64,000 nucleotides of DNA from Ministeria vibrans ATCC 50519 (GCA_943704425.1 CALSCP010000313.1:170713-234712), one strand, 5' to 3'; shown: positions 6,020 through 63,676, counted from the stretch's first letter. Numbers and translations are program-made. The notes: generated from the letters alone by a model not told the origin.

Positions 6020-6321
6020 CGGTAAGAAAAATAAATGAGTTGGAACAAATGACAAAATAATCAAAATAAATGAAAAGTCAAGTTTCTCAAGTGAAGAAGA
6101 AATAATACACCGAAGAGCAATACAATGCTTCCACCAATATAGGTCAACTCCATTTTTTACCCCAAGAAGAGGAAACGCCCATAGAGTGACGCCCATTGAC
6201 CCACAAATAGAAATAGGCCAGAGAGCGAACGAAATAACTTCTCAAAGATTAAAAAAAAATTATTCAAAATAGACATCAATCTTATTCCCGTGCTTTCGTG
6301 ACGCAGTTATTGTCTACGCCT

Positions 6322-12776: not shown

Positions 12777-13152
12777 TCGATCATCAATAATAGTACATTT
12801 CCTTTACCATTTTTCTTTAACAGAAATCACCATGACAGTGTGACCTTCAAATTTATAAATGACTCATTTTTGTGTTTTGTGGGATGGGGAGAATATTAGC
12901 ACGGCGCACAACACTTGAGTGAGTTGTGTTACATGAGTGAATTGTAAGAAAATAAGTAGAGAATGGGAAAAGTCAAAAGCTCACCCAAGCCTCAAGGGGA
13001 TGAAACGTATTATTATTATAGAATATGAGGATTGAGGGACTTGTATTTTTGACTCCATTCTCTCAACATTATTCATTAAGAATAGTGTCTGTCTCACAGT
13101 AGTCGAATAAATCAGGTTCAACTTCAAGAACTTTTTTTTTCACGTAAATACT

Positions 13153-14684
13153 ATGATGATCTCGTCTGTGGTGAGACGCGCAGCGCAGCTGGGTGTCGTG
13201 CAGCGAGCGATGGCGACGATGGCCATCAAGATGCCTGCGCTGTCGCCGACCATGGAGAGCGGCCAGGTCAAGTCCTGGTCCGTCCAAGTGGGGGACGAGG
13301 TACCCCTGCTTGTCATATCGTTTCTTTTGCACGCATGCCCAATCCTGATGTTTCAAATGTGTGTGTGTGTGTGTGTGTGTTTTTTTTTTGACTCGTTCGC
13401 ATATTTTGGAGACAATCACGCAAAACTGACACAATCGCGTCTGTGGCGCACAGGTGAGCGCTGGCGACGTGCTTTTCGTCGTGGAGACGGACAAGGCCGC
13501 TATGGACGTGGAGTCGTCGGACGACGGCGTAGTCGCCAAGATTCTAGTGGAGGCGAACGCAGACCAAGTGCCCATTGGCAGAGTGGTCGCGCTCCTGGTT
13601 GAGCCCGGCGAAGACCCCGCGTCGGCCGTGATGCCTGCCGAGACCAGTGGAGCTGTAGCAGCAGCAGCACCACCAGCGCCATCCTCGTCCCCGGCAGCGT
13701 CGTCACAACCAGCGTCTCTAGCCAGCACAACATCTGCGACAGCAACCATTCCCTCCAACTTGTTTCTGTCGCCCGCAGTGCGTCGCGTCGTGCTTGAACA
13801 TGGCGTTGATGTGTCCGCTGTGACAGCAACAGGGCCTGGCGGACGCCTGCTCAAAAGTGACATCCTTGCGTTTGTCAGCGGCGAAGCGACTGCGAAGCCA
13901 CAACCGAAATCGTCGGCAGCCGCAGCTGTCACTCCACGAGCACCGACCACCACCAGCAAGGCCACCAAGGGTCGAGTACCACCTACATCTCGCAGAGAAC
14001 GAACACACGTTGACCGAGCGATTGGCGAGGGCGCATCACGACCGAGCACGGCACAAGCAGGCTCGTTCGATGGCCAAATGATCACCGTCTCGGCGGATGT
14101 ACCACTGCGCTTCAACGCCACTCTCATCAACTCAGTACTGCACCCGCTTGCCCTGAACGCGCTTAAGGCCCACGGCGTATCAGATACCATTGAGTATGCA
14201 AAACCAAAGGACACTGAGAGAACGGCGAAAGAGAGGAGAGAGGGATAGAAAACACACCGATTCTGGTCGCCCGAGTGTGTGTGTGCGTATGTATGTCTTT
14301 GTGGTGTGTGTCTGTATATATATATATGTGTGTCTTTTGTGGTGTGTGTCTGTGTTTTTGTGGTGTGTGTGTGGATGAGCTAACTGGCATTGTGCGTAGA
14401 GTTATTGACATGAGCGGAAGTGGCGTGCGCGAGGCGACGGGAGTCGTCCAGCAGGGCATTAGTGCACCCACTCTGCACGTGGGCGCACCCACTGTTCTTG
14501 CCAGTACGATGTCTCTATTTTTTATCATTTTGTATAGATGTGTGTGTGTGTCTGACTCCTTTGACTTGTAATAGAATCCGTTGTGACGACACTCAGTCTC
14601 ACATGCGATTCGACCGATGCGCTTTCGGTTGCGCAGTGTCTCTCCGATGTGAGAGACGCACTCTCAGGACTACAGTCGCAGTAA
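13153..14684 (+). CDS. Pyruvate dehydrogenase protein X / E3-binding protein-like (lipoyl domain, subunit-binding domain, reduced core domain)
   Basis: Mitochondrial-type presequence, MPALSPTMESG, lipoyl-Lys motif VETDKAAMDVE, PSBD LSPAVRR..ATGPGGRLLKSDI, short spliced C-terminal domain without DHRxxDG. Confidence 0.75.
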
Positions 14685-14797
14685 CACACCAAAAGAAGTA
14701 GTACACAACAGATAACAATGGAATACGAAAAGTGTGAGAGTGTACTTGCAGGGTACACATGCGAGTATGTGAGTGACTGTGTAAGTCAGTGCGTGTG

Positions 14798-20117: not shown

Positions 20118-20202
20118 GGTCTCGAAAATGTGTTATAAAAAAATCAATTATTATTATTAATTAAGATCTCATTTGACCAAATAATTACAAATATTTGCAA
20201 CC

Positions 20203-25385: not shown

Positions 25386-27261
25386 ATGCCACGACAAAGT
25401 TTCTCTCGCTCGAAAAGGTCATCACAAATCCACCAAAGAAGGTTATTTTGTCGCTCATACGCAAATACGCAGACGAGCAAGTACCACGAGCGCGATGGAA
25501 TCGTTGCTGTTCAACGTGTCAAATCCGTCCACGCGTGGCGCAGGAATGCATATGCGCACATTCTGACGTTGCGGTGGAGTTGGGTCCTCTTCACTCTGCT
25601 TGTCGCTGTATTTGCTCTCTCTCTCGTCTTCGCCGCGCTGTACGCGATTGACTCGCGCGGTCTCGACATCACCGATGGCACCAATCGGTTTGCGGCCGCC
25701 TACTTGTATGCTCTCTCCGTCACCACGACCGTCGTCGACTCGCCTTATCCCGCCAATTCGCACTACACTGTGTGTCTGTCCAACCTGCAAATGATCATCT
25801 CACAGGTACTGCTGCATCTATATAGGCGTAGCCACAGGCGCCATTTTTTTTTCTGCCACACTCTAAACGTACACACATGCTTTGTATCAGCTGCTGTGGG
25901 TGTTCACAACGGGCATTGTGTTTGCGCGTCTCTCGCAGCCAATGCCCGAGTTGTCCATGGCGAACACGTTTGTCACGACGCGCCTCGGCGACTACGACCA
26001 TCTGTTGCTGCGGGTGGTGCTCACTGGCGAACCCCCGACGCTGCTTAGTGTCACGTTCAACATCGAGATGGGTTTATTCCGTGTGTGTCCTGTGACAGGT
26101 CCCTTTATTATGCTGCGTATGCTTGAGCTCTCTCGTCCCTTCGTCCCGCGCATGCGCTTTGCCGCAACCTTACGCCACATTATTGACGAGTCGTCGCCGC
26201 TGTGGGGCGTCTCGCTTGATGAACTAACTGCCCCCGACTCGACTAGCTTCTTTAATGTGTCCGTCTTTGCAACGCATCCCGTGTCAATGCAACCCGTCAT
26301 GGTCACACGCGAGTACGCAGGCAGCGACATCCGCGTCAACCACCACTACGAGAACATGATCAACATGAGCGACCCGCGCTACACCAAGCTCATTGATCAC
26401 ACTCTGTTGCATTCCACCATTCCTGCAATGCCGGGCGACGACACATGTGGAGAAGGGCCAACGGTTGTGGCGGATGGCGACGCAGTCGAGGTGGGTCACG
26501 TTGATGAGGAAGACCCATCTAGCGCAGGAGGAGCTGCAGAGCCCAGCGTGCATCTGACACAAGAGCAGCAGTTACACGCTCACGAGGAGGATGCGGACAC
26601 TGGCGAATGGCGTGGACGTGTGGGGCGCAGCGCGCGCGTCTTGCGTGCCCCCTCCTCCATCTCCATGTTGAGCACTCACTCCCACAACCGCCCACTACTC
26701 GCCACCACCGACAACGTTTCAATTGCCATGGCCGAAATGCACGACCGTGGACGACTCTCATACAACCCGCGCGCCGCCCGCCCTGCGTCCACTACAAGCC
26801 ACATGAGTGCCCTTAACCCGCGCGCCACTCATCGGCCTGCATCAACTGCATCGGTCGTGAGCGTCGCTGACAACGAGCATGGCCACGACATCCACAGCCA
26901 TGACACTGGGATGCCTGTCGTCACTACCCGTGCCGTCCAGGGCAACCTTGACGACGGCAGCGCTGGACAGGTGGGCATCTACACCGTCAACGCTGCCGAC
27001 CTCGTCGTCTCCGACAACACCGCCACTCCTAGCGGCAATGCGAGTCTCCATGTGCCCTACGCGCCCGTCGGTAGTGCCACTCCCACCTCCTCCTCTTCCG
27101 TTCTTCCCTCCGTCGCGCATCTCCGCTCCCACTCTTCTCGTCCCACGAGCACCATGTCCTCCCAGTCGACTGTGAGTCACCATCTTGAGATTACGCCCGG
27201 CTCCACGCCCCAGACCTTTCGTCTTGGCGACACTCTCATCACAGTCAATCCAGCAACGTAG
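25386..27261 (+). CDS. Inward-rectifier (Kir/KirBac-like) channel with non-canonical filter (2 exons; start uncertain)
   Basis: Slide helix/M1 YAHILTLRWSWVL..FAALY, M2 TGIVFARLSQP, cytoplasmic HIIDESSPL; intron about 25806-25890. Confidence 0.85.
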
Positions 27262-29378: not shown

Positions 29379-29472
29379 ACTGCACAATGAGGAACTGAAT
29401 AATTTGACTTTTATGAACGATCGAGAGTTCATCGAGATTCAAGATTCAAGTCATTCTTTTTTTTCTTTGGAA

Positions 29473-36793: not shown

Positions 36794-37035
36794 GCTTTTA
36801 CGTATCATCAACAGGAAAAATCAAATTATTTGAGTGATAAATCTCAGTGATTAAAGTGAAAAGTCACAAACTACTAAGAATGCTGTGAATATAATACAAT
36901 GGATTATGAAAAAAAAAACAACATACTATAATTATGTATAATTAATCATAACAATTATTCCAATGACACTAATAATTATCATTATCAACTTTATCATGAG
37001 CATTAAAAAAGAAAAACAATTAATATATTATTAAT

Positions 37036-39292: not shown

Positions 39293-39499
39293 GTAATAGA
39301 ATTTTTTTGCAATTTCAGTGATCAGTTACAAAGTTTCCAGCACTGCACAATTTTATTTACTCGCGCCAGTCACGAAATTGTTTTTTATGGATGACTATCC
39401 AGTGACGAGTGACGACAGTGCTTGCCGTCACCATGTGACCTACTTGAGATCCTGTGTTGTAACAATTGTTATGACGTGTATTTTGTCTGTGTCTCTCTC

Positions 39500-42400
39500 T
39501 CATCTAATATCAACAATGTCGCTTTCGTCGTCATCGAGCACACGCGTTGGACTCAGCATGGAGCGACCTTCGAGCGACTCGTCGACTGCAGTCGTCGACG
39601 TGGTGGCCGCTGCCAGAGCGGCCGCTGAGAGTGTGACGTTCTCTTCGACACTCTGTTGCTTGCTCGCTTCGTCCGAGAGCGACGTGAGCAGGCGACAGAG
39701 GGGCTCGAGAACGGCGGCGGGTCGCTCCTCCTGCACCAGCGAGCCACAGTAGTCAACCTGAATGTAAGTCGAGCGGTTCCGTGGCAATCTCTTCATCGCC
39801 ATGAGTTGTTCCTTGACCGTGGCCGACGCGAGTCCCACCAAGACCAGCACGGGACACTGTATGGCACAGAGTCGCGCGTCGAGGTCGCCCCGCTTCAGGT
39901 AGGTGTGCCAAAAGTGGGCAATGTTGCGACTGGGGATGGAGCTGGCAAGCGATGCTCGCACCATTTGTGTCACGGGACGTCCCATGGACAACGCCCGTGG
40001 CCCAAAATAGCGACGCAGCAGATGGTTCTCAGTCTGGACACTCACGCCCCAGTGTCTCAGGCGCCAAGTCGACGTCGCCACGTGACTGTGCTCCCACAGG
40101 CCGGGCTTGCACGCGACAAGACCGCTCACAATGAGTGCACATACTCGTCGAGGATTCGCCAGGGCAAACAACGTGAGCACATTGGCACCCGCACCCGAAC
40201 CAAAGAGCACCGCCTTGCTCAGCGAGAACTCGTCGTACACCTGATCGATGGCCGAGGAAAGTTCGTGTAGCGACGGATAGGCGGCGCCACTCGCAATCAC
40301 CTGTGCACCCTTCTCGTGGCCCGGTGCATCAATGTGATACACACAATAGGTGGCAAGCAACTGCGCAAGCTGACGATGGCGCGAAAACTCACCAAAACAC
40401 GTCTCGTGATTGAGACCAATATCGTGAAACGTCAGCATCGCAGGCTTTGAGCGGTCACCCACAACAGTCACCGTAATGCGCAAGTTATCGCGCGAGTTCT
40501 CGAGACGAATCACGTGCACGGCGTCTGTTTGACCACCAATACCCGCACCCGCCTCTCCCATTGTGTTGAGAAGAGCGACGCTCTCGGGTGGCAGCAGCAA
40601 TGGTGCTCGTTGGCGTCCGTCGCGCTCCTCGTGTGGCGTGCTCATTTCCAGGTTGGCATGGAGATGCATATCGTCGTCTACTTCGGACAAAACATGCATC
40701 ACACCTGTCGTTGGTGTTCCGATTGCCTCCGCCTCAATGCGCTGCAAAACGAACGTAAATATAAATATTATAGTAAAAATTATTATTATCATTAAAACAT
40801 AAAACATCAACCGCAATATTAATAACAATAATAGTAAAACAACAATGGCAAACAACAACAACAATGATAATATAACAACAGCAACAACAACAATAACAAC
40901 AATAATAATAACAATAATAATAACAATAATATAACAACAGCAACAACAACAATAACAACAATAATAATAACAATAATAATAACAATAATATAACAACAGC
41001 AACAACAACAATAACAACAATAATAATAACAATAATAATAACAATAATATTAAACAACAATGGTAAACAACAACAACAACAATGGAATTTTAATAACAAC
41101 AATAATAATAACTATTACAACAAAAACAATAAAAATAATAAAACTTTCAAAACTTATTTCGTACCAGTCTTTCCTGCTCCTCTTCAAAGTTTCGCACAGT
41201 CTCCGCTTTAGCAGCATGGCGCTGAAAAAAAAAGGATCATAATTATGAGATACTGTTGTTATTTTTGGCGGGGGAATCAAACGTCAATCAAACCTCTTGG
41301 ATGAGCTGCGCACGAGTCTTTTTGCGCGGCGGTGTCTTGAGAGGCATTCCTGCCTTGCCCTTGGGTGTCGGCACGTGAACTAATTCAGTCTCCTTCAGCG
41401 ATTCACCTGGTTGCTTGGCAAACAGTGTTCTGGGAAACAGCTAGAAAAACAGAGACAAAAAAAATGATTATTATAAAACACAACAACAAAACAAGCTCAG
41501 GCGAAACCGAAGCAGTAAAACAAATAATTATTACCTTTTTGCTTTTGCGCGGTGCTTTGTCATCATCCTCCTCATGAGTGTCTACGTGCTCTTCTACTTC
41601 AAGGTTTTTGTTGGACTCAGGCTGCTCGTCGTAGGGCAACGACCGGGAACGTTTGGCACGATCATGCGAGCTGGTGGGGTCCGCCTCGGCATATCGACCG
41701 CCTGGCATCGAAGCGGTGCGCTGCGTTGGCGCAAGACGACCCCCGGTACCGCTCACGCACTGTATAGTGGCACGCTGAATGGAATCATCAGACGAGGCAG
41801 AGGTAGACTTCATAGCCTTGGCATAGCGGATATGAGTTGCCGCCGTCTCAGCCAGCCCTTCTGAGGTAACGCTCGTGGTGGGTCTTTTGGACATGCTATC
41901 CAGACTCGAGGAGCGTCGTGTTGCCTTCTGTTTCCCCTTGACTGGGCTGTGCACAAGCATCACCTGATGCGCCACCACAGGCACCATGTCGACCACAACT
42001 CGGTCGCGTACAAAATCGTGACCGTCCATGGACTTTACCTTGACCGCGGCCTGCCTCTTTGGCGACGCCTCAGGCTCGGGCGACGCCGGCACCACTGAGG
42101 TTGTGGTTGCCTTGAATTTGAGCAGTTTGTGTCGCAACATCATCTCCTCTTCCATCTTGCGACGGTTCACTGCTGTTTGCGTGAGATTGGCGGCGGTACG
42201 GGAGCGATGTTGACTTGTGTCAACGGCAGGCACCAAGGGGTCGTGGCAGTAGGGTTCGCTTGAAGAAACGGACAATGTGGATGTGGTGGCGGGCGTCATG
42301 AGTGATGTTGCAGCACTCTCCGTGCCCGCTGAATCGCGACAGAGCGCCTCCTTGGTAAGACGTGTCACTCTCGTGACGACCTTGCGTGGGTCTACTTTGA

Positions 42401-45400
42401 CAAAGACGGGAAAAGGCGAGCCCACCAGGCGTTTTTGATTGGCACGGATGCTAATGAGGTATTTGCCGCTGCACGTCGGCTCCCACGTGACAAAGTGTGA
42501 TCCACTACCCTGATCGACAATGTTGGGAATGACGTCACGAGGACCCGTAATGGTGACTGTCACAATGGGCGGAGGAGTGAGGCCTGCTTGGACCGGTGCG
42601 AGAGGCTTGAGCGAGCCGGAGTTGACAATGAAGGAAGAAGGCATGCCCACGCGTGCGCTCCGTAGACCGTCGCCGTACGCACGCACACGAAGGCGCTCGT
42701 CAAACTTGCTGCACGACGCTGTGCTGAGGAAGGGCGAGCCGGCAATGTGACGATCGCCGAGACGCACCGAAACAGCATACAAACCGGGCTTGGGCAAGAC
42801 AAAGGCACACGAATAGGATCCCTTGCGAGAGTCGCGGACAATGCCGCGCACTGTGTCCATCGTCTTGGCCATCGCACCGTCGTTGACCGACGAGTCTGAG
42901 TGCGCCTGTTCAAGTTCGGCAAACACCTCGACCACGTCGCCTCCATGAAGCACCGGGTGGCCACGCACGTCGCGTGCCTGCATTGTGAAAATGGCCGGCA
43001 CGCCTACCTCGACGGAAGCCAGCGACTCGGTCTCGATGCGGCACTTGCTTGGCTCGGCCTGTGCAATGGCAGCCAGACACACCGGAGAGCCCACGACACT
43101 CTCGTCGTTAATGGTGACCGCGAGTCGATAGTGACCCTCGTACTGAACCACAAGGGTGACGCGGTACAGGCCCGTGCCACAGTCAACAATGTCCACGCGC
43201 GAGTGACTGGGCCCCTCGACCGCCACACGCACCATGTCGCCACCACGCTTTCGATTGCTTTGAACCTCAAACGTGACGGGACCCACTAGGAAGCGACCGT
43301 GCGTCTCAGTTGCGTCAGCAATCGCCTGGAGTGTTGAAGGCCACGCGGACGCGTCGACACACCCCAAAATGGTGTCGTTGTGGAGGCGCACAAAGGTCTC
43401 GGCGCCGCGCGCCTCGATTGCCGACGCGGACACCGTCACATTGAAAGGACTGCCACGGATCGCCTGACCATCCATGAGAATGTGGACGTTGCACGTACCC
43501 GGTGCCAAAGCATCGTACACAAGCGCATAGGTGCCGTCGCGACAGTCCTCGAACAGGGGCGCCGCCAGAACAGTTGAGTCGGACACAGTCGCCAGCATCG
43601 TACGGCCGCCCACTCGCACCTGTTCGCCAGCGTAGCCTACCGACTGGAGTTTACAACGTGAACGCTCTCCAGCGGGCACCGGGTCGTCGGGCGTGCCCGG
43701 CAACGAGTCGCCAATGATGTAGGAAAGAGCAGGACAAGCACCAAGGCCGACGCGAATGGAGAGAGGTGAGTCGGGGATGGGCAAACCATTGACGAGAATT
43801 TTCATGTGGTAAATGCCAACGCGCGTTACCCTGTACGCAATCTGGTAGCTGCCGTCGTGGCGATCGGTGATGGCGCTAAGCCCCACGGCATTGGTCGAGC
43901 CGCTTGGGTCGGCAAGGGTCACTCTGACGTCGTCGTCGCCGCTAGTCTTGGGCTCGCCGCTGGTCAACATGAGGTACAAAGTGATAAACGACGTGGTTCC
44001 AAGTGCCCCGTATGACATGGCAAGGCCATCGAGATAGCAACGATTGGCATCCACCTCATCAAGCTCCTCAATGGACTCGGGCTCGGAGGGAATTGGCATG
44101 AGCTCGAGGTTGCTTGACGACGAGCGGCGCACCACGACGGGGGGTTGTTTGGGCGCATGGTTCTGCGCGCTGCCATCAGACAGTGATGCAATTGAAGCGG
44201 AGCCAGCGAGGTGGGGTGGGCATACGTGTGACAATGAGGGTGATGGACGGACATCCTGCAGGGCACCCAACTCAGTGACTACAAGGATAGTGTAAGGGCA
44301 GCCGGCAATAGCCTGACCATTGACTTGGATGCGGGCGAGGTATGTTTCAGCCGTGTTGAGTTGGTATTCGACAAGGAACAGTCCATTGCTAAAATCGGTG
44401 ACCACCACGGTGTGGCTTTCGTCGCGACCGTCGGCAAGCGACTCAATCTGCACCGTAACACGGTCACCACCGCTCGCTTTGGCGCGGCCCTCGTGAGTCA
44501 TAGTGTGCACATGAAAGTGGGCGGTCTGACGCACAAGCACCACGTCGAGACCTTCCCCACTTGCGTAACATTTGCTCGGGTCCACCTCTTCGTTGACGAC
44601 TCCCATCGCTTGGAGGGAGCGCACGTGCAGTGCCGAGCCTGCCAGATCACCGCCTACATGTGAGCCATTGAGAAGTGTCACAATGACGTAATGACCCGGA
44701 CGGTCCATGGTGTAGTGAACGTCGTAGCTGCCATCGCGGTTGTCGTTGATGGTGGCGACACAGGGAACAAGGGCACCGTCAAACTCCCGTTCAAAGTCCA
44801 CTTCGACACGATCGCCTCCGGTCGTCTTGGGAGTGCCGTCGGCAAAGTAGGCGAGGACGCGGAAGTGGGCGGGTTCGTCGACAAAGGCATCGTGCAGACC
44901 GTCACCCTCGACGCGACACTGGGGCGCGGCCGCCTCCTCGGCAACCTCCACAAGGAAGGGCGAATCGAGGACGGGCACCCCATTGACGGAGATGTTCAGG
45001 TGAAACGAGCCAGCCTCGTCGACGCGATACACCGCGTCGTACGTGCCGTCACGATTGTCAATGACCAGAGGTTGGCGTGGTACGGCCGTAGGCGAGGCAG
45101 GAAGATTTTCTTCGATGGTTGTCAGTTGCACGACCACCCGGTCACCCCCCGTGGTCTTTTTGGCGCCGTCCAAGGTTAGAGACTGCACTGCAAACGCGAC
45201 GGGCTTGCGACGCGTGATCGAGCCAAGCGACGTGCCAAAGGCATAGCCCACAATGGATTCGCCGAGGTTTGCCTCGCGTGACTGATCGACGAGTCTTGCA
45301 GCAAGCATGGCGGCCTCGTCGCCACTGACAGTGCGATGAAAGTTGCTCCGCCTTCGACCGCGAAAGTGCCCTGAGGCTGAAAATTCAGACGCCGTGGGCG

Positions 45401-46763
45401 ACTCGGAGAGGTTGGGGTGCGACTGGGAACGTGTAGGCGGTGGTGTGGATGTTTGGAGGGGCGGTGAGAATGCGAGCGGGTCGACATAGTCGCGACTGTC
45501 GTCGAGGGCTTCGTCTTGGTCGTTGCTGTCGAGCCTTCTACGATGAGAAGCAATGGGCGACGCGTACGGAGTGACAGCGGGTGACGCATTAGCGGTGGGG
45601 CCGGGCGAGATATTTATGTCTGTGATGGTGCGATCGAGGTCCTTCGCCACCAGCAACGGATCCTCGTCGTCATCAGTCAGAAGACCTTTGCTCGCAATTG
45701 CGGACGTGGGATGTAGTTCTTCGCTGTCGATAACCACGCTATCTTCGATGGTGTGTCCTTCATCCTCCTTCTCCTCGCCCTCCTCCTCTTCCTCCTTCTT
45801 CTCCTCCTCCATTTCCCAAGTTGCCTCCTCGTCGTACTCACTCATGTCGTCGTCTGCCGTGGTATCAGCCTGCTCCTTGACTGTCATTTGCTCGTCTTCC
45901 TCCTGATCGGTGACCTCCGCCGTTGACTCCTCCGCGACCAACGACGAGTCGACCAGACTTGGCGTCATGTCGAGGTCATCCAGCAATGTGCCCGTGCGTT
46001 GTGACAAATCGTGCTCGCTGGGATCGTCAACTCCCGAGTCTGTGGTGGTACGGCCGTCACTGCTGTGACAGCTGCCATTGAGCATTGGGACTGCAACGCT
46101 ATGCGGGTGCTCAGGCAGCGGTGCACACGGTTCACCCAGAGGCAGGTCTTTGTTGGCTTGTGCGGGGGAGCGGCAAGCAAGCTCCTCGGCTTGCTCATCG
46201 GCTTCGCGGAGACGGTCGAAGAATGGATCATCGTCCAGGTCGTCGTCGCCGTCGTCTTCGTCAGGGTTTTCTTTGAGAAAATCGACGGGAGCGCTTTGGA
46301 GGATGGTGGTGGCTGGACTGGAGATGGTGCACTCAATCATGCTGTCAATCATACTGCTATAGTCCGGCAAGGAAGGCACTGAGTCAAAGTAGGCGAGAGG
46401 TGACAGGGCCCGCGGTGGCGGCGGCGACGACAGACGAACGGCCGCAAATGATTGTGAGTCGGTCTTGAGCAAGCCTGTGGTCGTGGTGGTCGCAAGCGCT
46501 CCGTTCACAAACGCAGTCGCAGTCGAGCTGTCGCTGGAACTTTGGGAAAGCGAACGTGCAGCACGGTGATTGTCGACCAAACTGAAATGGGTTGCGGCGC
46601 GTCTGGCAGCGGGCGAGGACAGCGCCGACGACGCAGGAGACTCGTCCGGAGACATAGTCAGACCAAGTGAGATACTGTCGCTGTCGCCCCCATTACTCGT
46701 TTCCGACGCAAGTGAGCTCTCGTACTCAAGACCCACCGATGCGCGTGGCGACGCAGACGTGGC
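39500..46763 (-). CDS. Filamin-repeat (8x) - NDRG alpha/beta-hydrolase-fold fusion protein (5' end uncertain)
   Basis: Exons ~46763-41535, 41440-41294, 41221-41165 and 40741-39500, joined by phase-0 GT-AG introns. Filamin motifs GGD..V, DNRDG[TS]Y, I.GSPF; NDRG motifs TFHDIGLNHETCF, HIDAPGHEKGA, GSGAGANV. Confidence 0.8.
40780..41140. repeat. (AAC/AAT)n intronic microsatellite
   Basis: Direct inspection; similar (AAT)n tracts at about 12480-12570, 23150-23220, 31265-31350 and 52525-52715. Confidence 0.9.
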
Positions 46764-47163
46764 CTGTCCCACAAAAAGAAAGAAAAGAGAGAGAGAAAAA
46801 AAAAGCGAGTTTTAGAATGGGTTCAAAAAAAAAAAGAGCAAGAAAATGTAAGATGGAAAAAGCGGCATAAGCAACATAGGGATTGGGACGTGTGACAAAG
46901 GTGGAAAACTGCAAGGGTGGTCGTCAGCGGCGCAGGACTGAGGAGGGGTTGTTTTTTTTGCAGAGCTATTGAGAGAGAGAGAGAGAGGAGATTGCAGAGG
47001 AATGTTGAACAATCGACCGGCGGAAGTGCACGACAGCCAGCGTCGCATGCGGAGCACGGCGGCCCGCCTGCAGGCGTCAGCGGGGCTCTGTGCATGGTGA
47101 ACACCACACCGTCCGCTGCCTTCCGCAGCACACATGCAGTGAGTCCCACTTCAACTGACTGAC

Positions 47164-50400: not shown

Positions 50401-52633
50401 GCGATGGCCAAGGAGAAGACGGAGCGCGAGGAGCGTTTGGCTGAAGAGGTACAACGCGCCGAGTTGGCTGCGGTGGCCCGTCGCGAACAGCTGGCCCTTT
50501 TGAACAGCGAACAAGGCTCATCGTCGTCATCGAAGACAGCCACGACTACTGTCGGAAAAGTCGATGCGTCGGTGTGGGTCGAGCGTGCCGCGTCTGATCC
50601 TGATTTTGTTCCACGTGCCGACTCACGACCCCGGTCGCAGCATTTTGTGGTGCGTCCTCACGAGACGTTGGGTCGCTCAGGCTCTGATACGAAACCAGTT
50701 GCGGTGGCGTCGGCACCTGAAGCACACGACGACGATAACCTGGACACCAAGGCGACGGCAGCCGTGACCAAGGGTCGTGCGGCATTTGAGGCAAATTCGG
50801 TTAAGGAGCAGGAGATGAGCGATCGTGCGGCGCAGCGTGAGCGCGATCGAGAGGAGCGTCGTCGTGCGGCACAAGAGGACATTGCACGCAAGGAGGCGGA
50901 GTTGGCGGCGCGCAAGGCGAAGCGACTCGAAGAGAAACAGCGGAAGGATGCTGAAGCTCACGAGCGCAAGTTGAAGCAAGTGGCTGAGGCGCAACGTATC
51001 AAAGAGGCTGCGGAGGCTGCTGCTGTCCGCGCCGCTGAGGCTGCTGCAGCTGCTGCGGCGGCGGCAGAGGCTGCGGCGCGTGCTGCTGAAGAATCAGAGG
51101 AAGAAGAAGAAGAAGAAGAAGAAGAAGAAGAAGAAGAAGAAGCGGAGTCGAAGCGGACGGAGGACGAGTGGGCCGTGGCGGCGGCCGCGGCAGATGAGGA
51201 GCAGCGAATCCGAGAAGAGGCGCGTGAGGCACAGCGACGCGTGGAGGAGGTGGAGCGAGCGGCGGCCGAGGAGGTAGCACTACGCGAGGAGGAGGCTGCG
51301 CGTGCCGAGGCACAGGCCGAGGCGTTGCGACAGCAGGCGGAAGACGAAGCGTCACGGGCGAAACAGGAGAGGCAACGGCGTCGCGAGGAGGCAGCACGGC
51401 GTCAGGCAGAGATTGAGGCGGAACAGCAGGAAGAGTATGCTAAGGCGGAGCGGCGCAAACAGGAGCTGGAGCGTTGCAACAGTGGTAACACGACGACAGT
51501 GGTGGCGTCGCGTGCGACAGCTCGTCGTCAGAGTTCCGACCATAATGCCATGCGGAAGCCCACGAGTGTGGCGACTGCACCTCCTGCGACGTCAGCACAG
51601 GCTCGTGGTGCAAATGCGCCTGAAAGCTACCTGGCGGGCAACAAGCGCATCGACGCCGAATCGGAGCGCATTGCGCAGGAGCGTGAGCGTCGCATCATTG
51701 CCGAGCGCATTGCCTTTGAGCAGGTTGAGCTGCGTGTGCGTGGAAAGTTGCCTAAAGATAGCATCTTGGCGGCAAATGAGCACGCTTCCGGTGCGGCCTC
51801 AGCACCGTCCGTGACTGCAAGTGTGCCCGAGCCAGAGTCACCTCAGTGTTTGCACGAGTCGATGCTGACTGAAAGTGCTGTGGTGTCAGGGCTGTCTGTG
51901 CGCGAGCGCATGAAGCGCTTTGCCGCCGGCGGTGGTGGCGCAGACTTTGCGCCGCTCCCCGCGCCCGTCACAGTTTCACCGGCAGTTGCAGCGCAAATCT
52001 CGGCTAGTTCAGCGCCGACGCTGCGTTCGGGCAAGATGGCGGCAGCCACAACAGCAACGACGACGACATCGAGCACCCCGGCTGCCCCTATCGTTGCGGT
52101 GGTGGCGCCTTTGTCGCCTGCACCGACTGTTGTTGCACCCGCTACGACGTATCAGTCTGCGATTCGCGGTGCAACGGCCAGTCCGCGCGGCTCCATTGGC
52201 TCGTCGTCGTCGCGCTCGTCACTTCCATCTGTCACTCCGGCGTCCTCGTCGACGAATTCGTCCACCGAGCCCAAGTACTTGTTCTCATCGTCGCCTCCGA
52301 CTCGTCGCTGGAGTCGTCCAGCACAGCCTGCCGAGCCTGTCGTCGACAAGAAGGTGCGCGATCTTCCGCCAAACTTCCACACGCACGTCAGTGCCAAGTT
52401 TGTCAAGCGTCAAGACGTCGAGGAGTCCATATCCAAGTCGCGATCGCCCATGGTGGGTGGGCGCGTCGCCGAAAGTGCCCCCGAAGATGAAATTGATCCA
52501 AAGTCCCAAAAGAGTACCCACAATGATTATTATTATTAGTATCTTATTATTATTATATTATTATTATTATTATCATTATTATTATTATTATTCTTATTAT
52601 TCTTATTTAATATTATTATTATTATTATTGTTA

Positions 52634-52713
<80 letters not shown>

Positions 52714-53401
52714 GCTTTTGCTCTTTTTATCAAGCGAGTGCAATCAAATACCTTGCTCACCCCTTTCGCTTTTCTTGTTGTGTGTGTGTGTGTGTAGGTA
52801 CAAAGAAAAAGAAGAGCAAGTGGACGCTGGAACGTGAAGAGAAACAAAACTACGAAATTCTGCGGAAATTTGATGTGATCAAGAAGGTATACGCTCACTT
52901 ACACATCCAAGCATAAGCGAGAGCAGTTGACTCACTTTCTCGTGTCTTGTTTGTTGCAGGCAATTGAGGCACGTATCAAACGACCTATTTGCGAGTTTCC
53001 TGACGAGATTGCAGAGAAGATGCGTGACGGACAGGTACAATGTGACGGATGAACCATCGACAAACCGCTCACTTGTGTTTGTCTTTATTAGGTTCTGTGT
53101 GAACTTGCGAATGCTGTGAGACCGGGTGTTGCGGCGGGTTTTGCGCGCAGTACCGACGGTTCCACCCTCTCGATGATCAAGTCGCGGTACGTCACACACT
53201 CACATACATACATTTACACACGAGTCCACGATGATTCATTGATGTCATATTTGTGCAAGTAGGAAGAATTTGGATATTTTCATGGGAGCGTGTCGGCAAC
53301 TGAATGTGCCTGCGACAGAGATGTGTGCCGTGTCGGATATCATCGAGTGCAAGGACCTTGGGACGACGCTCAAGTGCGCCGAGGCGCTCCTGCGCATGTG
53401 A
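47479..53401 (+). CDS. LRCH: LRCH-family protein (LRR, long E/A/R/K helix, C-terminal calponin-homology domain)
   Basis: Exon 1 ALEEAQETGILELSGQKLRVWP..YDL; NNPLVSPPAHICARGRVHIFQHL; CH domain DG|QVLCELANAVRP..NLDIFMGACRQLNVP. Confidence 0.85.
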
Positions 53402-53618
53402 AAGTGAGTCTATCCCGCAAGAGACACGCGGAGAAGAGAGAGAAAGAGACAAGAGTGAAAGAGCTTTTTTTTTAAAAAAAACAATAAGCGAAAGGTTAAA
53501 CAAAGGAAGAAATAAGAAAGGACGAGTCCAAGTGCTGTGATGAAGACGTAGGAACAAAGATCGGTGTTGTATAAAGCGAGAGAGAATGTGTACGAATGGG
53601 TGTGCATGTGAGGGAGAG

Positions 53619-55026: not shown

Positions 55027-55430
55027 CTTGCGGTGGGGTGAGGGGGCTGCTGCTCGCTTCGGGGCTGCAGATATGTGGGTGTCGAGACAAGGCAGCGGTC
55101 GACTCAAGTGAACAGTTGAATTGATTCACAATTTTCAAAATTCAAACAAAAATCAAATTATTATTATTTTGATTAGCCATCGTAATTATTTTGATCATTT
55201 AGTGCAGTAATCAACTCGAGCAACTTAGAATAAGTAGAGCCCCTTTTGCGGTTTTGCCTGTCTTTCGCGTTGGCAGTAGTCGACACTCGACACTAGTCAC
55301 TCAGTAAAAGACACTCACACTAATATTGTTCGTTTTAATTTTTATTAATGAAACGAATCGTAATACTACAATACCATCAGCTGTCATGGTCGTCATAATA
55401 AATAATACTATTGTAATGTAATAGTACAAG

Positions 55431-63381: not shown

Positions 63382-63628
63382 TTTCAAAAAAAAAATTCAA
63401 AAAAAAATTAAAAAATCGAAAATCAAATGAGTTCCAAGTTTTAAAAAAAATTTAAATAAATAAATAATTAATAGTTTTTTTTAATCTCATTTAAAAGTAG
63501 TTTGTAAACATGGGCAAGGACGTCGAAAAGAANNNNNNNNATCAAATGAGTTCCAAGTTTTAAAAAAAATTTAAATAAATAAATAATTAATAGTTTTTTT
63601 TAATCTCATTTAAAAGTAGTTTGTAAAC

Positions 63629-63676
63629 ATGGGCAAGGACGTCGAAAAGAAGGAGAAGAAGGAGAAGAAGAAGACG
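63629..63676 (+). CDS. First exon of a gene running off the window (MGKDVEKKEKKEKKKT)
   Basis: ATG after an AT-rich spacer, followed by a GTAAG donor; product not identifiable. Confidence 0.5.

What the first reader, a model, noticed from the sequence alone, without database searches (positions are those of the whole stretch)
39500..45270. Filamin-repeat rod fused in frame to an NDRG domain
Seen: the 1789-aa ORF with 8 filamin Ig repeats is linked to the NDRG ORF through two small exons (41440-41294, 147 nt; 41221-41165, 57 nt). All three introns are phase-0 GT-AG and no stops occur (..RKSKK|LFPRT..QLIQE|RHAAK..QERL|RIEAEA..). The nucleophile elbow is GSGAGA, non-catalytic as in NDRGs. Known: NDRG/NDL proteins are normally stand-alone, and filamins normally start with CH actin-binding domains, none of which is visible here. 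Inference: an architecture I do not recognise, linking NDRG function to a cytoskeletal or mechanosensitive scaffold.
Basis: partly seen in the sequence, partly recalled or inferred. Interest (0 to 1): 0.8.

Follow-up and report, generated by a model that had tools for sequence, protein, structure and literature searches.

The report
Filamin-repeat rod spliced onto NDRG domain
In an unannotated single-celled eukaryote that looks like a relative of animals, one gene most likely joins a rod of eight filamin-type repeats to a non-catalytic NDRG domain through three small introns; this domain combination was not found in public data, but no transcript yet proves it.

Summary
On the minus strand, a 1746-codon ORF with eight Pfam filamin repeats is followed by a 94-nt intron, a 147-nt exon, a 72-nt intron, a 57-nt exon, a 423-nt intron and a 413-codon exon. 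That last exon encodes an Ndr/NDRG domain (Pfam 5e-68; its fold matches human NDRG1-3). All junctions are GT-AG, phase 0 and free of stops.

A splice model self-trained on 264 kb of this contig places all six sites inside the range of the genome's own introns. They lie in the top 0.06-2.8% of decoy sites and sit exactly on the GC/AT boundaries. Both mini-exons have positive coding potential only in the required frame.

No fused relative turned up. The 150 closest NDRG cluster representatives are all 653 aa or shorter. Eighty environmental NDRG loci have no filamin repeats nearby, and none of 92 filamin hits carries Ndr. The genome also holds a stand-alone, divergent NDRG paralogue and canonical CH-bearing filamins.

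No transcript or orthologue evidence exists. The rival reading is two genes, with a stop 15 nt into intron 3 and NDRG starting at an internal Met; I give it about 0.15.

The link to the cytoskeleton or to mechanosensing is speculation, because no actin-binding domain is present. The scan had not found this before on other DNA.

The parts
41535..46655 (-). Exon 1, counted from the first in-frame ATG (the ORF is open from 46772). It encodes about 470 aa of acidic, Ser-rich N-terminus with no Pfam domain, then eight filamin-type Ig repeats, then a 292-aa basic, Ser/Thr-rich tail.
   Evidence: ORF list; Pfam; codon log-odds +46 in frame 0 for the tail against -156 and -138 in the other frames.
42411..45242 (-). 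Eight filamin/ABP280 repeats, at about aa 511-1454 of the ORF, with a gap of about 78 aa resembling a hinge between repeats 3 and 4.
   Evidence: Pfam PF00630, 8 stretches, E 7e-105. Eight separate six-frame matches on C313, converted to window coordinates.
41441..41534 (-). Intron 1: 94 nt, phase 0, AAG|GTAATA...TTTTTCTAG|C.
   Evidence: Sequence. Donor 6.8 (decoy tail 0.2%), acceptor 12.0 (decoy tail 0.06%; 2.5% in T-rich context). GC 0.28.
41294..41440 (-). Exon 2: 147 nt, 49 aa, basic and Pro-rich, containing one in-frame ATG.
   Evidence: Codon log-odds +4.2 in the required frame against -27 and -15. Unique in the genome. No Pfam hit.
41222..41293 (-). Intron 2: 72 nt, phase 0, GAG|GTTTGA...TTTTTTCAG|C.
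   Evidence: Sequence. Donor 4.3 (decoy tail 2.8%), acceptor 7.4 (decoy tail 0.75%).
41165..41221 (-). Exon 3: 57 nt, 19 aa, a charged segment that reads on into the start of exon 4 (..EEEQERL|RIEAEA..).
   Evidence: Sequence. Codon log-odds +2.2 in the required frame against -5.2 and -16.6.
40742..41164 (-). Intron 3: 423 nt, phase 0, CTG|GTACGA...GTTTTGCAG|C, GC 0.19. It is filled by an (ATT/GTT)n array with a 59-nt minisatellite in 4.5 copies. If the intron is retained, an in-frame TGA lies 15 nt into it.
   Evidence: Sequence; tandem repeats. Donor 6.1 (decoy tail 0.4%); acceptor 6.8 (decoy tail 1%, but 36% in T-rich context).
39500..40741 (-). Exon 4: 413 codons plus TGA. Residues 1-70 are modelled with low confidence, about 74-380 form the NDRG fold, and an acidic tail follows.
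   Evidence: Pfam. AlphaFold2 model with pLDDT above 90 for 267 residues and below 50 for residues 1-51, 53-70 and 388-413.
39686..40477 (-). Ndr/NDRG alpha/beta-hydrolase-fold domain, exon-4 residues 89-352.
   Evidence: PF03096, 229 bits. PDB NDRG1 6zmm at E 1.5e-33. The twelve best Foldseek hits are all NDRG1/2/3, TM 0.82-0.91 normalised by target.
40184..40201 (-). Nucleophile elbow G-S-G-A-G-A, with Gly where a hydrolase has Ser.
   Evidence: Translation. Aligns to GTGAGA of NDRG1. G181 and G185 are invariant and G183 is conserved in at least 90% of 30 NDRG sequences.
39352..39357 (-). AATAAA about 145 nt after the stop codon, a candidate polyadenylation signal. No AATAAA lies on the sense strand between the filamin ORF and exon 4.
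   Evidence: Read from the sequence. Inference only.
46764..46790 (-). Pyrimidine tract ending in CAG just upstream of the ORF's first codons, a candidate acceptor of a 5'-UTR intron.
   Evidence: Acceptor score 7.5 for an exon starting at 46763; sequence. Inference only.

Best explanation
This is most likely one four-exon gene encoding a cytoplasmic protein of about 2,190 aa, counted from the first ATG. Its order is:
- an acidic N-terminal region of about 470 aa with no Pfam domain;
- a rod of eight filamin-type Ig repeats with one hinge-like gap;
- a linker of about 450 aa, basic and Ser/Thr-rich, made of the ORF tail, the two mini-exons and the first 70-88 residues of exon 4;
- a C-terminal NDRG alpha/beta-hydrolase-fold domain that lacks the nucleophile serine.

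Shown here: the domains, the fold, the missing nucleophile, the reading frames and the quality of the splice sites.

Inferred: that the three introns are actually removed, so that one polypeptide results. Also inferred is the mode of action. The Ig rod would act as a scaffold that binds partner peptides or self-associates, as filamin repeats do in other proteins. The non-catalytic NDRG module, held on a long flexible tether, would dock or regulate a partner. By analogy with solved human NDRG3 complexes, that partner could be a membrane pump; this last point is speculation.
For: - Domains: 8 filamin repeats and Ndr; NDRG fold.
- Splicing signals: a PWM was self-trained on 264 kb of the same contig and cleaned to 46 introns; the target locus was not in the training set. 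It gives donors 6.8/4.3/6.1 and acceptors 12.0/7.4/6.8. These fall at the 24th-91st percentile of training introns. Decoy tails are 0.2-2.8% for donors and 0.06-1% for acceptors. Three introns of the neighbouring LRCH gene score in the same range.
- Order of sites: between 41750 and 40400 the strong donors and acceptors alternate D-A-D-A-D-A exactly at the GC/AT switches.
- Every downstream exon starts with an acceptor-type site, very strong for exon 2 and ordinary for a T-rich context for exons 3 and 4, so none looks like a first exon.
- Two real tandem intergenic spacers have no donor scoring 4 or more.
- Mini-exons: both have lengths that are multiples of 3 and are positive in codon log-odds only in the required frame.
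- No AATAAA on the sense strand and no ATTTGAYTTTT promoter-proximal motif lies between the ORF and exon 4.
- The first 70 residues of exon 4 are low-confidence linker, not a folded N-terminus.
Against: - There is no transcript, EST or orthologue evidence. The only other copy in public data is a 1.25-kb metagenome contig that stops inside exon 4.
- Intron 3 is long: 423 nt against a median of about 125 in the raw inferred set. It is mostly microsatellite, and similar arrays occur in intergenic DNA too.
- The acceptors of introns 2 and 3 are unremarkable among AG sites in T-rich sequence, with tails of 0.30 and 0.36.
- If intron 3 is retained, the frame ends after 5 codons, with AATAAG nearby.
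- In-frame Met codons exist in exon 2 and at exon-4 residues 15, 25 and 33. Residue 61 is Met here but Leu in the second strain.
- A tandem spacer of about 240-410 nt is normal here, so size alone does not exclude an intergenic reading.
- The PWM rests on self-inferred introns and is noisy.
Confidence: 0.7

Rival explanations
1. There are two adjacent genes. The filamin-rod gene uses introns 1 and 2, then ends at the TGA 15 nt past exon 3. The 423-nt AT-rich stretch is a 3' end plus promoter. NDRG is a stand-alone protein of about 400 aa starting at a Met near the beginning of exon 4.
For: - A stop codon and AATAAG lie just inside 'intron 3'.
- Met15 of exon 4 aligns with the start Met of most stand-alone NDRGs.
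- Tandem genes here can be only 240-410 nt apart, and such spacers can be AT-rich.
- Every NDRG relative seen is stand-alone.
- The acceptor of intron 3 is not exceptional for a T-rich context.
Against: - The donor at 41164 (CTG|GTACGA, score 6.1, decoy tail 0.4%) sits exactly at the GC-to-AT switch and is in phase with the acceptor at 40742.
- Real spacers in the window have no donor scoring 4 or more.
- The spacer would be almost pure microsatellite at GC 0.19, whereas the real spacers are complex sequence. One of the two real spacers carries the ATTTGAYTTTT motif; this stretch has none.
- Only about 42 nt of normal-GC sequence would precede Met15.
Confidence: 0.15
2. Both products exist. 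The fused mRNA is made, and an internal promoter (in the 3' part of the filamin ORF, intron 1, exon 2 or intron 3) or alternative polyadenylation also yields a separate rod protein and a separate NDRG protein. The fused form could be the minor one.
For: - There are in-frame ATGs in exon 2 (giving MPLKTPP..) and early in exon 4.
- All exons are symmetric in phase 0, so skipping or alternative starts keep the frame.
- A premature stop follows retention of intron 1 (at 41403) or of intron 3.
Against: - No promoter-type motif or AATAAA lies in the interval.
- Nothing in the sequence calls for a second start.
- The genome already has a separate stand-alone Ndr-like gene.
Confidence: 0.1
3. It is an artefact. 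The draft contig may wrongly join two loci, or the mini-exons may be decaying or non-functional sequence, so the model describes no real protein.
For: - The genome is a fragmented draft: 2860 contigs, with N runs in this contig.
- A duplicated block flanks an N gap elsewhere in the window.
Against: - There are no Ns between 39000 and 47800.
- An independent metagenome contig confirms exon 4 at 98.7% DNA identity, with 5 of 6 SNPs at third codon positions, which points to purifying selection.
- All exons are intact and open.
Confidence: 0.05

Closest known systems
NDRG family (human NDRG1-4, Drosophila MESK2, plant NDL1; Pfam PF03096)
   Same: It has the alpha/beta-hydrolase fold with Gly at the nucleophile position (GxGAGA). 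The closest solved structures are NDRG1, NDRG3 and NDRG2. Identity to animal, Pigoraptor, Sphaeroforma, Salpingoeca and streptophyte NDRGs is 30-39%.
   Different: Known members, and all 150 closest representatives, are single-domain proteins of 138-653 aa. In this model the domain sits at the C-terminus of a protein of about 2,190 aa, behind about 1,775 residues of rod and linker.
Filamins (FLNA/B/C, Drosophila cheerio, Dictyostelium gelation factor)
   Same: It has tandem filamin/ABP280 Ig repeats with a hinge-like gap. The best database hits are animal filamins, at about 22% identity.
   Different: It has no N-terminal tandem CH actin-binding domain and only 8 repeats. A long tail and an NDRG domain follow the last repeat, which in filamins is the C-terminal dimerisation repeat. 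The same genome has CH+filamin genes elsewhere, on C12, C739 and C486.
CH-less filamin-repeat proteins (for example TRIM-NHL proteins and plant GEX2; named from my own knowledge)
   Same: They use filamin-type Ig repeats as a scaffold or spacer without direct actin binding.
   Different: None of those I know carries an NDRG or other alpha/beta-hydrolase domain. This was not tested here beyond the searches.

Membership tests
NDRG / Ndr (PF03096) | Matches the Ndr profile above the curated cut-off | tested here: met
   229.3 bits against a cut-off of 23.3, covering profile positions 11-276 of 283.
NDRG / Ndr (PF03096) | Alpha/beta-hydrolase fold closest to solved NDRG structures | tested here: met
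   AlphaFold2 model with mean pLDDT 80.6 and 267 residues above 90. Foldseek ranks 1-12 are all NDRG1/2/3, E 2.5e-24 to 7.6e-21. phmmer hits NDRG1 6zmm at 1.5e-33.
NDRG / Ndr (PF03096) | Nucleophile Ser replaced, so non-catalytic (GxGxG elbow) | tested here: met
   GSGAGA aligns to GTGAGA of NDRG1. G183 is conserved in at least 90% of 30 family members. The Asp and His positions of the triad were not examined.
NDRG / Ndr (PF03096) | Usual architecture: a stand-alone single-domain protein with a short N-terminal extension | tested here: not met
   Under the favoured model, about 1,775 residues precede the domain. Relatives are 138-653 aa, and 74 of 80 environmental loci have an upstream in-frame stop within 167 residues. 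This feature describes the usual form and does not define the family.
Filamin (actin cross-linker sensu stricto) | Tandem filamin/ABP280 Ig repeats | tested here: met
   8 stretches of PF00630, E 7e-105, and eight six-frame matches.
Filamin (actin cross-linker sensu stricto) | N-terminal actin-binding domain made of two CH domains | tested here: not met
   There is no PF00307 hit in the 1746-aa ORF, in its first 472 aa at E up to 1, or anywhere on contig C313 in the genome-wide CH search. The upstream space is closed by the divergent LRCH gene at about 47479.
Filamin (actin cross-linker sensu stricto) | C-terminal repeat mediating dimerisation | not testable with these tools
   Sequence alone does not show dimerisation. 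Here the last repeat is followed by about 450 aa of linker and then the NDRG domain.

The most novel reading that the evidence does not exclude
The fusion could be a 'Rosetta stone'. On this reading, NDRG pseudo-hydrolases, whose molecular role is still unclear, normally work on filamin-type Ig scaffolds. They might, for example, tether or regulate membrane pumps or receptor tails. Solved human sodium-pump/NDRG3 complexes exist (PDB 9kcl, 9kcm, 9kcr; entry titles). In this lineage the two partners would have been welded into one polypeptide, which predicts a physical or functional NDRG-filamin link in animals too.
Probability: 0.1. Interest if true: 0.7.

Novelty: new variant of a known kind. 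Interest (0 to 1): 0.4.

Why it matters
NDRG proteins are conserved from plants to humans and are linked to stress responses, trafficking and tumour suppression, yet their biochemical role remains poorly defined. A natural fusion to a filamin-type rod, in what looks like a unicellular relative of animals, would give a concrete and testable hint about the kind of partner or scaffold they act with. It would also add a case of lineage-specific domain shuffling among proteins tied to animal cell adhesion and the cytoskeleton. If the introns are not spliced as modelled, the locus is just two ordinary neighbouring genes.

Tried and rejected
**Bare in-frame GT-AG joining as evidence.** It finds 142 'introns' in the window, including joins across obvious intergenic DNA such as the NDRG stop to the next gene. 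I dropped it in favour of a trained PWM and decoy distributions.

**Codon-only coding segments.** They score (ATT)n arrays as coding, because ATT has the highest log-odds. Low-GC segments had to be filtered out.

**The microsatellite as an intron marker.** Similar arrays lie in both intronic and intergenic contexts, so this was uninformative.

**Comparative genomics of the locus.**
- The JGI metagenome scan with the single protein found nothing.
- The profile scan gave 80 distant NDRG loci, none with filamin nearby.
- The Sphaeroforma NDRG lies at a contig end, so its context is uninformative.
- No relative above 40% identity exists in the protein collections, apart from one 266-aa metagenome fragment.

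**Literature.**
- No paper combines NDRG, filamin and domain architecture.
- NDRG1 and filamin are only co-mentioned, for instance as substrates of basophilic kinases.
- The metagenome sample id was not traceable.
- No paper in the library covers the NDRG3/sodium-pump structures.

**Pfam on single small exons of the neighbouring LRCH gene.** This gave no hits, so its CH domain is seen by eye only.

**The joined model.** All searches were done exon by exon, by reference. The word-index protein search therefore could not be aimed at long Ndr-containing proteins. Absence of fused relatives rests on the length-unrestricted representative search (best 150 of 711 hits) and.

**Organism.** The third word-index search and an identification of the organism were left out as not decisive.
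Full report
**What is there**

The window is G000:C313:170713-234712, part of a 29.7-Mb draft of 2860 contigs. On the minus strand, an ORF open from 46772 (first in-frame ATG at 46655) runs to a GT at 41534. Pfam finds eight filamin/ABP280 repeats in it (E 7e-105). The ORF's first 472 residues and its last 292 residues contain no Pfam domain. Six-frame matches place the repeats at window 45242-42411, about aa 511-1454, with a gap of about 78 residues between repeats 3 and 4.

- intron 1, 41534-41441 (94 nt);
- exon 2, 41440-41294 (49 aa);
- intron 2, 41293-41222 (72 nt);
- exon 3, 41221-41165 (19 aa);
- intron 3, 41164-40742 (423 nt), filled by an (ATT/GTT)n array that includes a 59-nt minisatellite;
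- exon 4, 40741-39503, then TGA.

Exon 4 carries an Ndr domain: PF03096, 229 bits, residues 89-352. Its nearest solved relatives are human NDRG1, NDRG3 and NDRG2, with E 1.5e-33 to 3e-25. An AlphaFold2 model built on a 30-sequence alignment is confident from about residue 74 to 380, and below pLDDT 50 for residues 1-51, 53-70 and 388-413. Its twelve best Foldseek matches are all NDRG structures. The elbow is GSGAGA, with Gly at the nucleophile position as in NDRGs.

**Is the splicing chain more than chance?**

A blind search for in-frame GT-AG joins across AT-rich islands gives 142 solutions in the window, some across plain intergenic DNA.

I therefore fetched 200 kb more of the contig and trained codon log-odds on 45 long ORFs. 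From pairs of coding segments I inferred introns by EM, then cleaned the set to 46 introns. The target locus was not in the training set. The consensus is MAG|GTAMG and a T-rich tract followed by YAG|G.

| Intron | Donor score | Acceptor score |
|---|---|---|
| 1 | 6.8 | 12.0 |
| 2 | 4.3 | 7.4 |
| 3 | 6.1 | 6.8 |

These scores fall at the 24th-91st percentile of the training introns. Decoy tails are 0.18%, 2.8% and 0.4% for the donors, and 0.06%, 0.75% and 1% for the acceptors. Among AG sites in T-rich sequence, the acceptors of introns 2 and 3 are ordinary, with tails of 0.30 and 0.36, so the weight rests on the donors and on intron 1.

Further points:
- Between 41750 and 40400, the strong sites alternate donor-acceptor three times, each at a GC/AT switch.
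- Two genuine tandem spacers have no donor scoring 4 or more: the NDRG stop to the next ATG (410 nt), and the next gene's stop to the following ATG (240 nt).
- Three introns of the neighbouring LRCH gene score D 4.1-5.5 and A 6.1-8.7, which is the same range.
- Both mini-exons are multiples of three and have positive codon log-odds only in the required frame: +4.2 against -27 and -15, and +2.2 against -5 and -17.
- Exons 2, 3 and 4 each begin with an acceptor-type site, so none looks like a first exon, and the only upstream donor for exon 2 is the end of the filamin ORF.
- I saw no AATAAA on the sense strand in the interval. The first one follows the NDRG stop by about 145 nt.
- The promoter-proximal motif ATTTGAYTTTT is enriched in the window (7 copies against 1.7 expected), and the three copies I checked sit 20-70 nt upstream of start codons. 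It is absent from this interval.

**What argues against**

- No RNA evidence is reachable. The only other copy in 15 billion proteins is a 266-aa fragment from a 1.25-kb ENA metagenome contig that covers 39449-40693, entirely inside exon 4. That contig is a second strain at 98.7% DNA identity. Five of six SNPs are at third codon positions, and one turns Met61 into Leu. This shows purifying selection on exon 4 but says nothing about the junctions.
- Intron 3 is long for this genome, and similar microsatellites occur in intergenic DNA.
- If intron 3 were retained, the rod protein would end five codons later, near an AATAAG.
- Exon 4 has Met codons at residues 15, 25 and 33 that could start a stand-alone NDRG. 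Met15 lines up with the start Met of most relatives, though that may be an alignment effect.
- Tandem spacers of 240-410 nt are normal here.

I put the single-gene reading at about 0.7, two separate genes at 0.15, both kinds of product at 0.1 and an artefact at 0.05.

**Is the architecture known?**

- A length-unrestricted HMMER search of 1.84 billion cluster representatives with exon 4 gave 711 hits. The best 150 are 138-653 aa long, and none is long enough to be a fusion of this kind.
- The named ones are animal NDRG3/MESK2, Pigoraptor, Sphaeroforma, Salpingoeca, Diphylleia and green-lineage proteins.
- The word search with the filamin region gave 92 hits, mostly animal filamins at about 22% identity, none carrying PF03096.
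- Eighty environmental NDRG loci, with flanks where the contigs allowed, have no filamin-like sequence. In 74 of them an in-frame stop lies within 167 residues upstream of the domain.
- The nearest ESM Atlas clusters carry only Ndr and overlapping alpha/beta-hydrolase families.
- No paper combines the three terms I searched.

I therefore could not aim the length-windowed word search at long Ndr-bearing proteins, and hits 151-711 were not seen.

**Context in the genome**

- A second, divergent Ndr-like gene lies on C491. It is multi-exon, has its ATG just before the domain, and has a divergently oriented gene about 200-400 nt upstream, so it is stand-alone. The canonical, better-scoring NDRG copy is therefore the one attached to the rod.
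- Canonical CH+filamin genes exist on C12, C739 and C486, so the rod here is an extra, CH-less paralogue.
- Its 5' side is closed by the divergent LRCH gene, whose first exon is at about 47479. That leaves no room for hidden CH exons.
- Other readers' notes call the genome holozoan-like, and one follow-up calls it a Capsaspora-like filasterean. I did not verify this.
- Several facts suggest an unannotated and unsampled lineage: the nearest NDRG in EukProt (Pigoraptor) is only 37% identical, no other relative above 40% was found, and no protein identical to the filamin ORF turned up.

**How it probably works**

The domains and the long low-complexity stretches with no Pfam domain between them are shown. 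The rest is inference. The Ig rod is a scaffold, since filamin repeats bind beta-strand peptides of partner tails and can self-associate. The NDRG module, which cannot hydrolyse, is a docking or regulatory domain on a tether of about 450 residues. PDB holds human sodium-pump/NDRG3 complexes (entry titles), which is a lead for the kind of partner and nothing more. With no actin-binding domain, a cytoskeletal or mechanosensing role is not supported by the sequence.

**Verdict**

The fused gene model is the best-supported reading but is unproven. The domain combination is new as far as these searches reach, which makes it a new variant built from known parts. Interest is moderate.

Noticed in passing
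window 36816-36826(-), 63418-63428(-), 29402-29412(+), 55148-55158(-), 20139-20149(-), 12968-12978(-), 6073-6083(-): ATTTGAYTTTT (up to 1 mismatch) occurs 7 times against 1.7 expected. The three copies I checked sit 20-70 nt upstream of the ATG of a long ORF, which suggests a very compact core promoter or start-site motif. None lies near the filamin or NDRG exons.
   Followed up: partly
L004 (ENA ERZ23497388 scaffold_11996) = window 39449-40693: A metagenome contig from a second strain, 98.7% identical in DNA. Of the 6 SNPs in the NDRG exon, 5 are at third codon positions and one changes Met61 to Leu. The organism is therefore present in a public metagenome.
   Followed up: yes
window 52514-52797 and 52798-53402 (+): The LRCH gene continues past its 1380-codon ORF through a 284-nt intron filled with (ATT)n. 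Four small exons follow that look like a CH domain by eye. Single exons gave no Pfam hit. Its other three introns have typical GTAY donors.
   Followed up: partly
window 63440-63640 (-): A block of about 95 nt is duplicated on both sides of an 8-N gap just upstream of the giant coiled-coil gene's ATG. This is probably a gap-closing artefact of the assembly.
   Followed up: no
G000:C491:~122400-123200 (-), loci L002/L003/L025: A second, divergent multi-exon Ndr-like gene, about 38% identical over the elbow region and also GSGAGA. It looks stand-alone, with a divergently oriented WD40-like gene upstream.
   Followed up: partly
G000:C12:~65100-71900(-), C739:~13700-14750(-), C486:~25600-26700(+): CH-domain matches lie directly upstream of filamin repeats on the same strand. 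The genome therefore also has canonical CH-bearing filamin-type genes, alongside several CH-less rods on C1214, C312, C755 and C913.
   Followed up: no
window 46763-46790 (-): A strong pyrimidine tract plus CAG (acceptor score 7.5) lies just before the first codons of the filamin ORF. It suggests a 5'-UTR intron inside the shared 700-nt head-to-head promoter region with LRCH.
   Followed up: no
window 41590-41640 (-), ORF residues ~1712-1725: The linker contains basophilic-kinase or 14-3-3-like motifs (..KRSRSLPYD.., and ..TRRSSSLDS.. further upstream). They recall the SGK/Akt-phosphorylated RSRS repeats in the tail of human NDRG1, which I cite from memory. They could equally be chance in a basic, Ser-rich region.
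   Followed up: no
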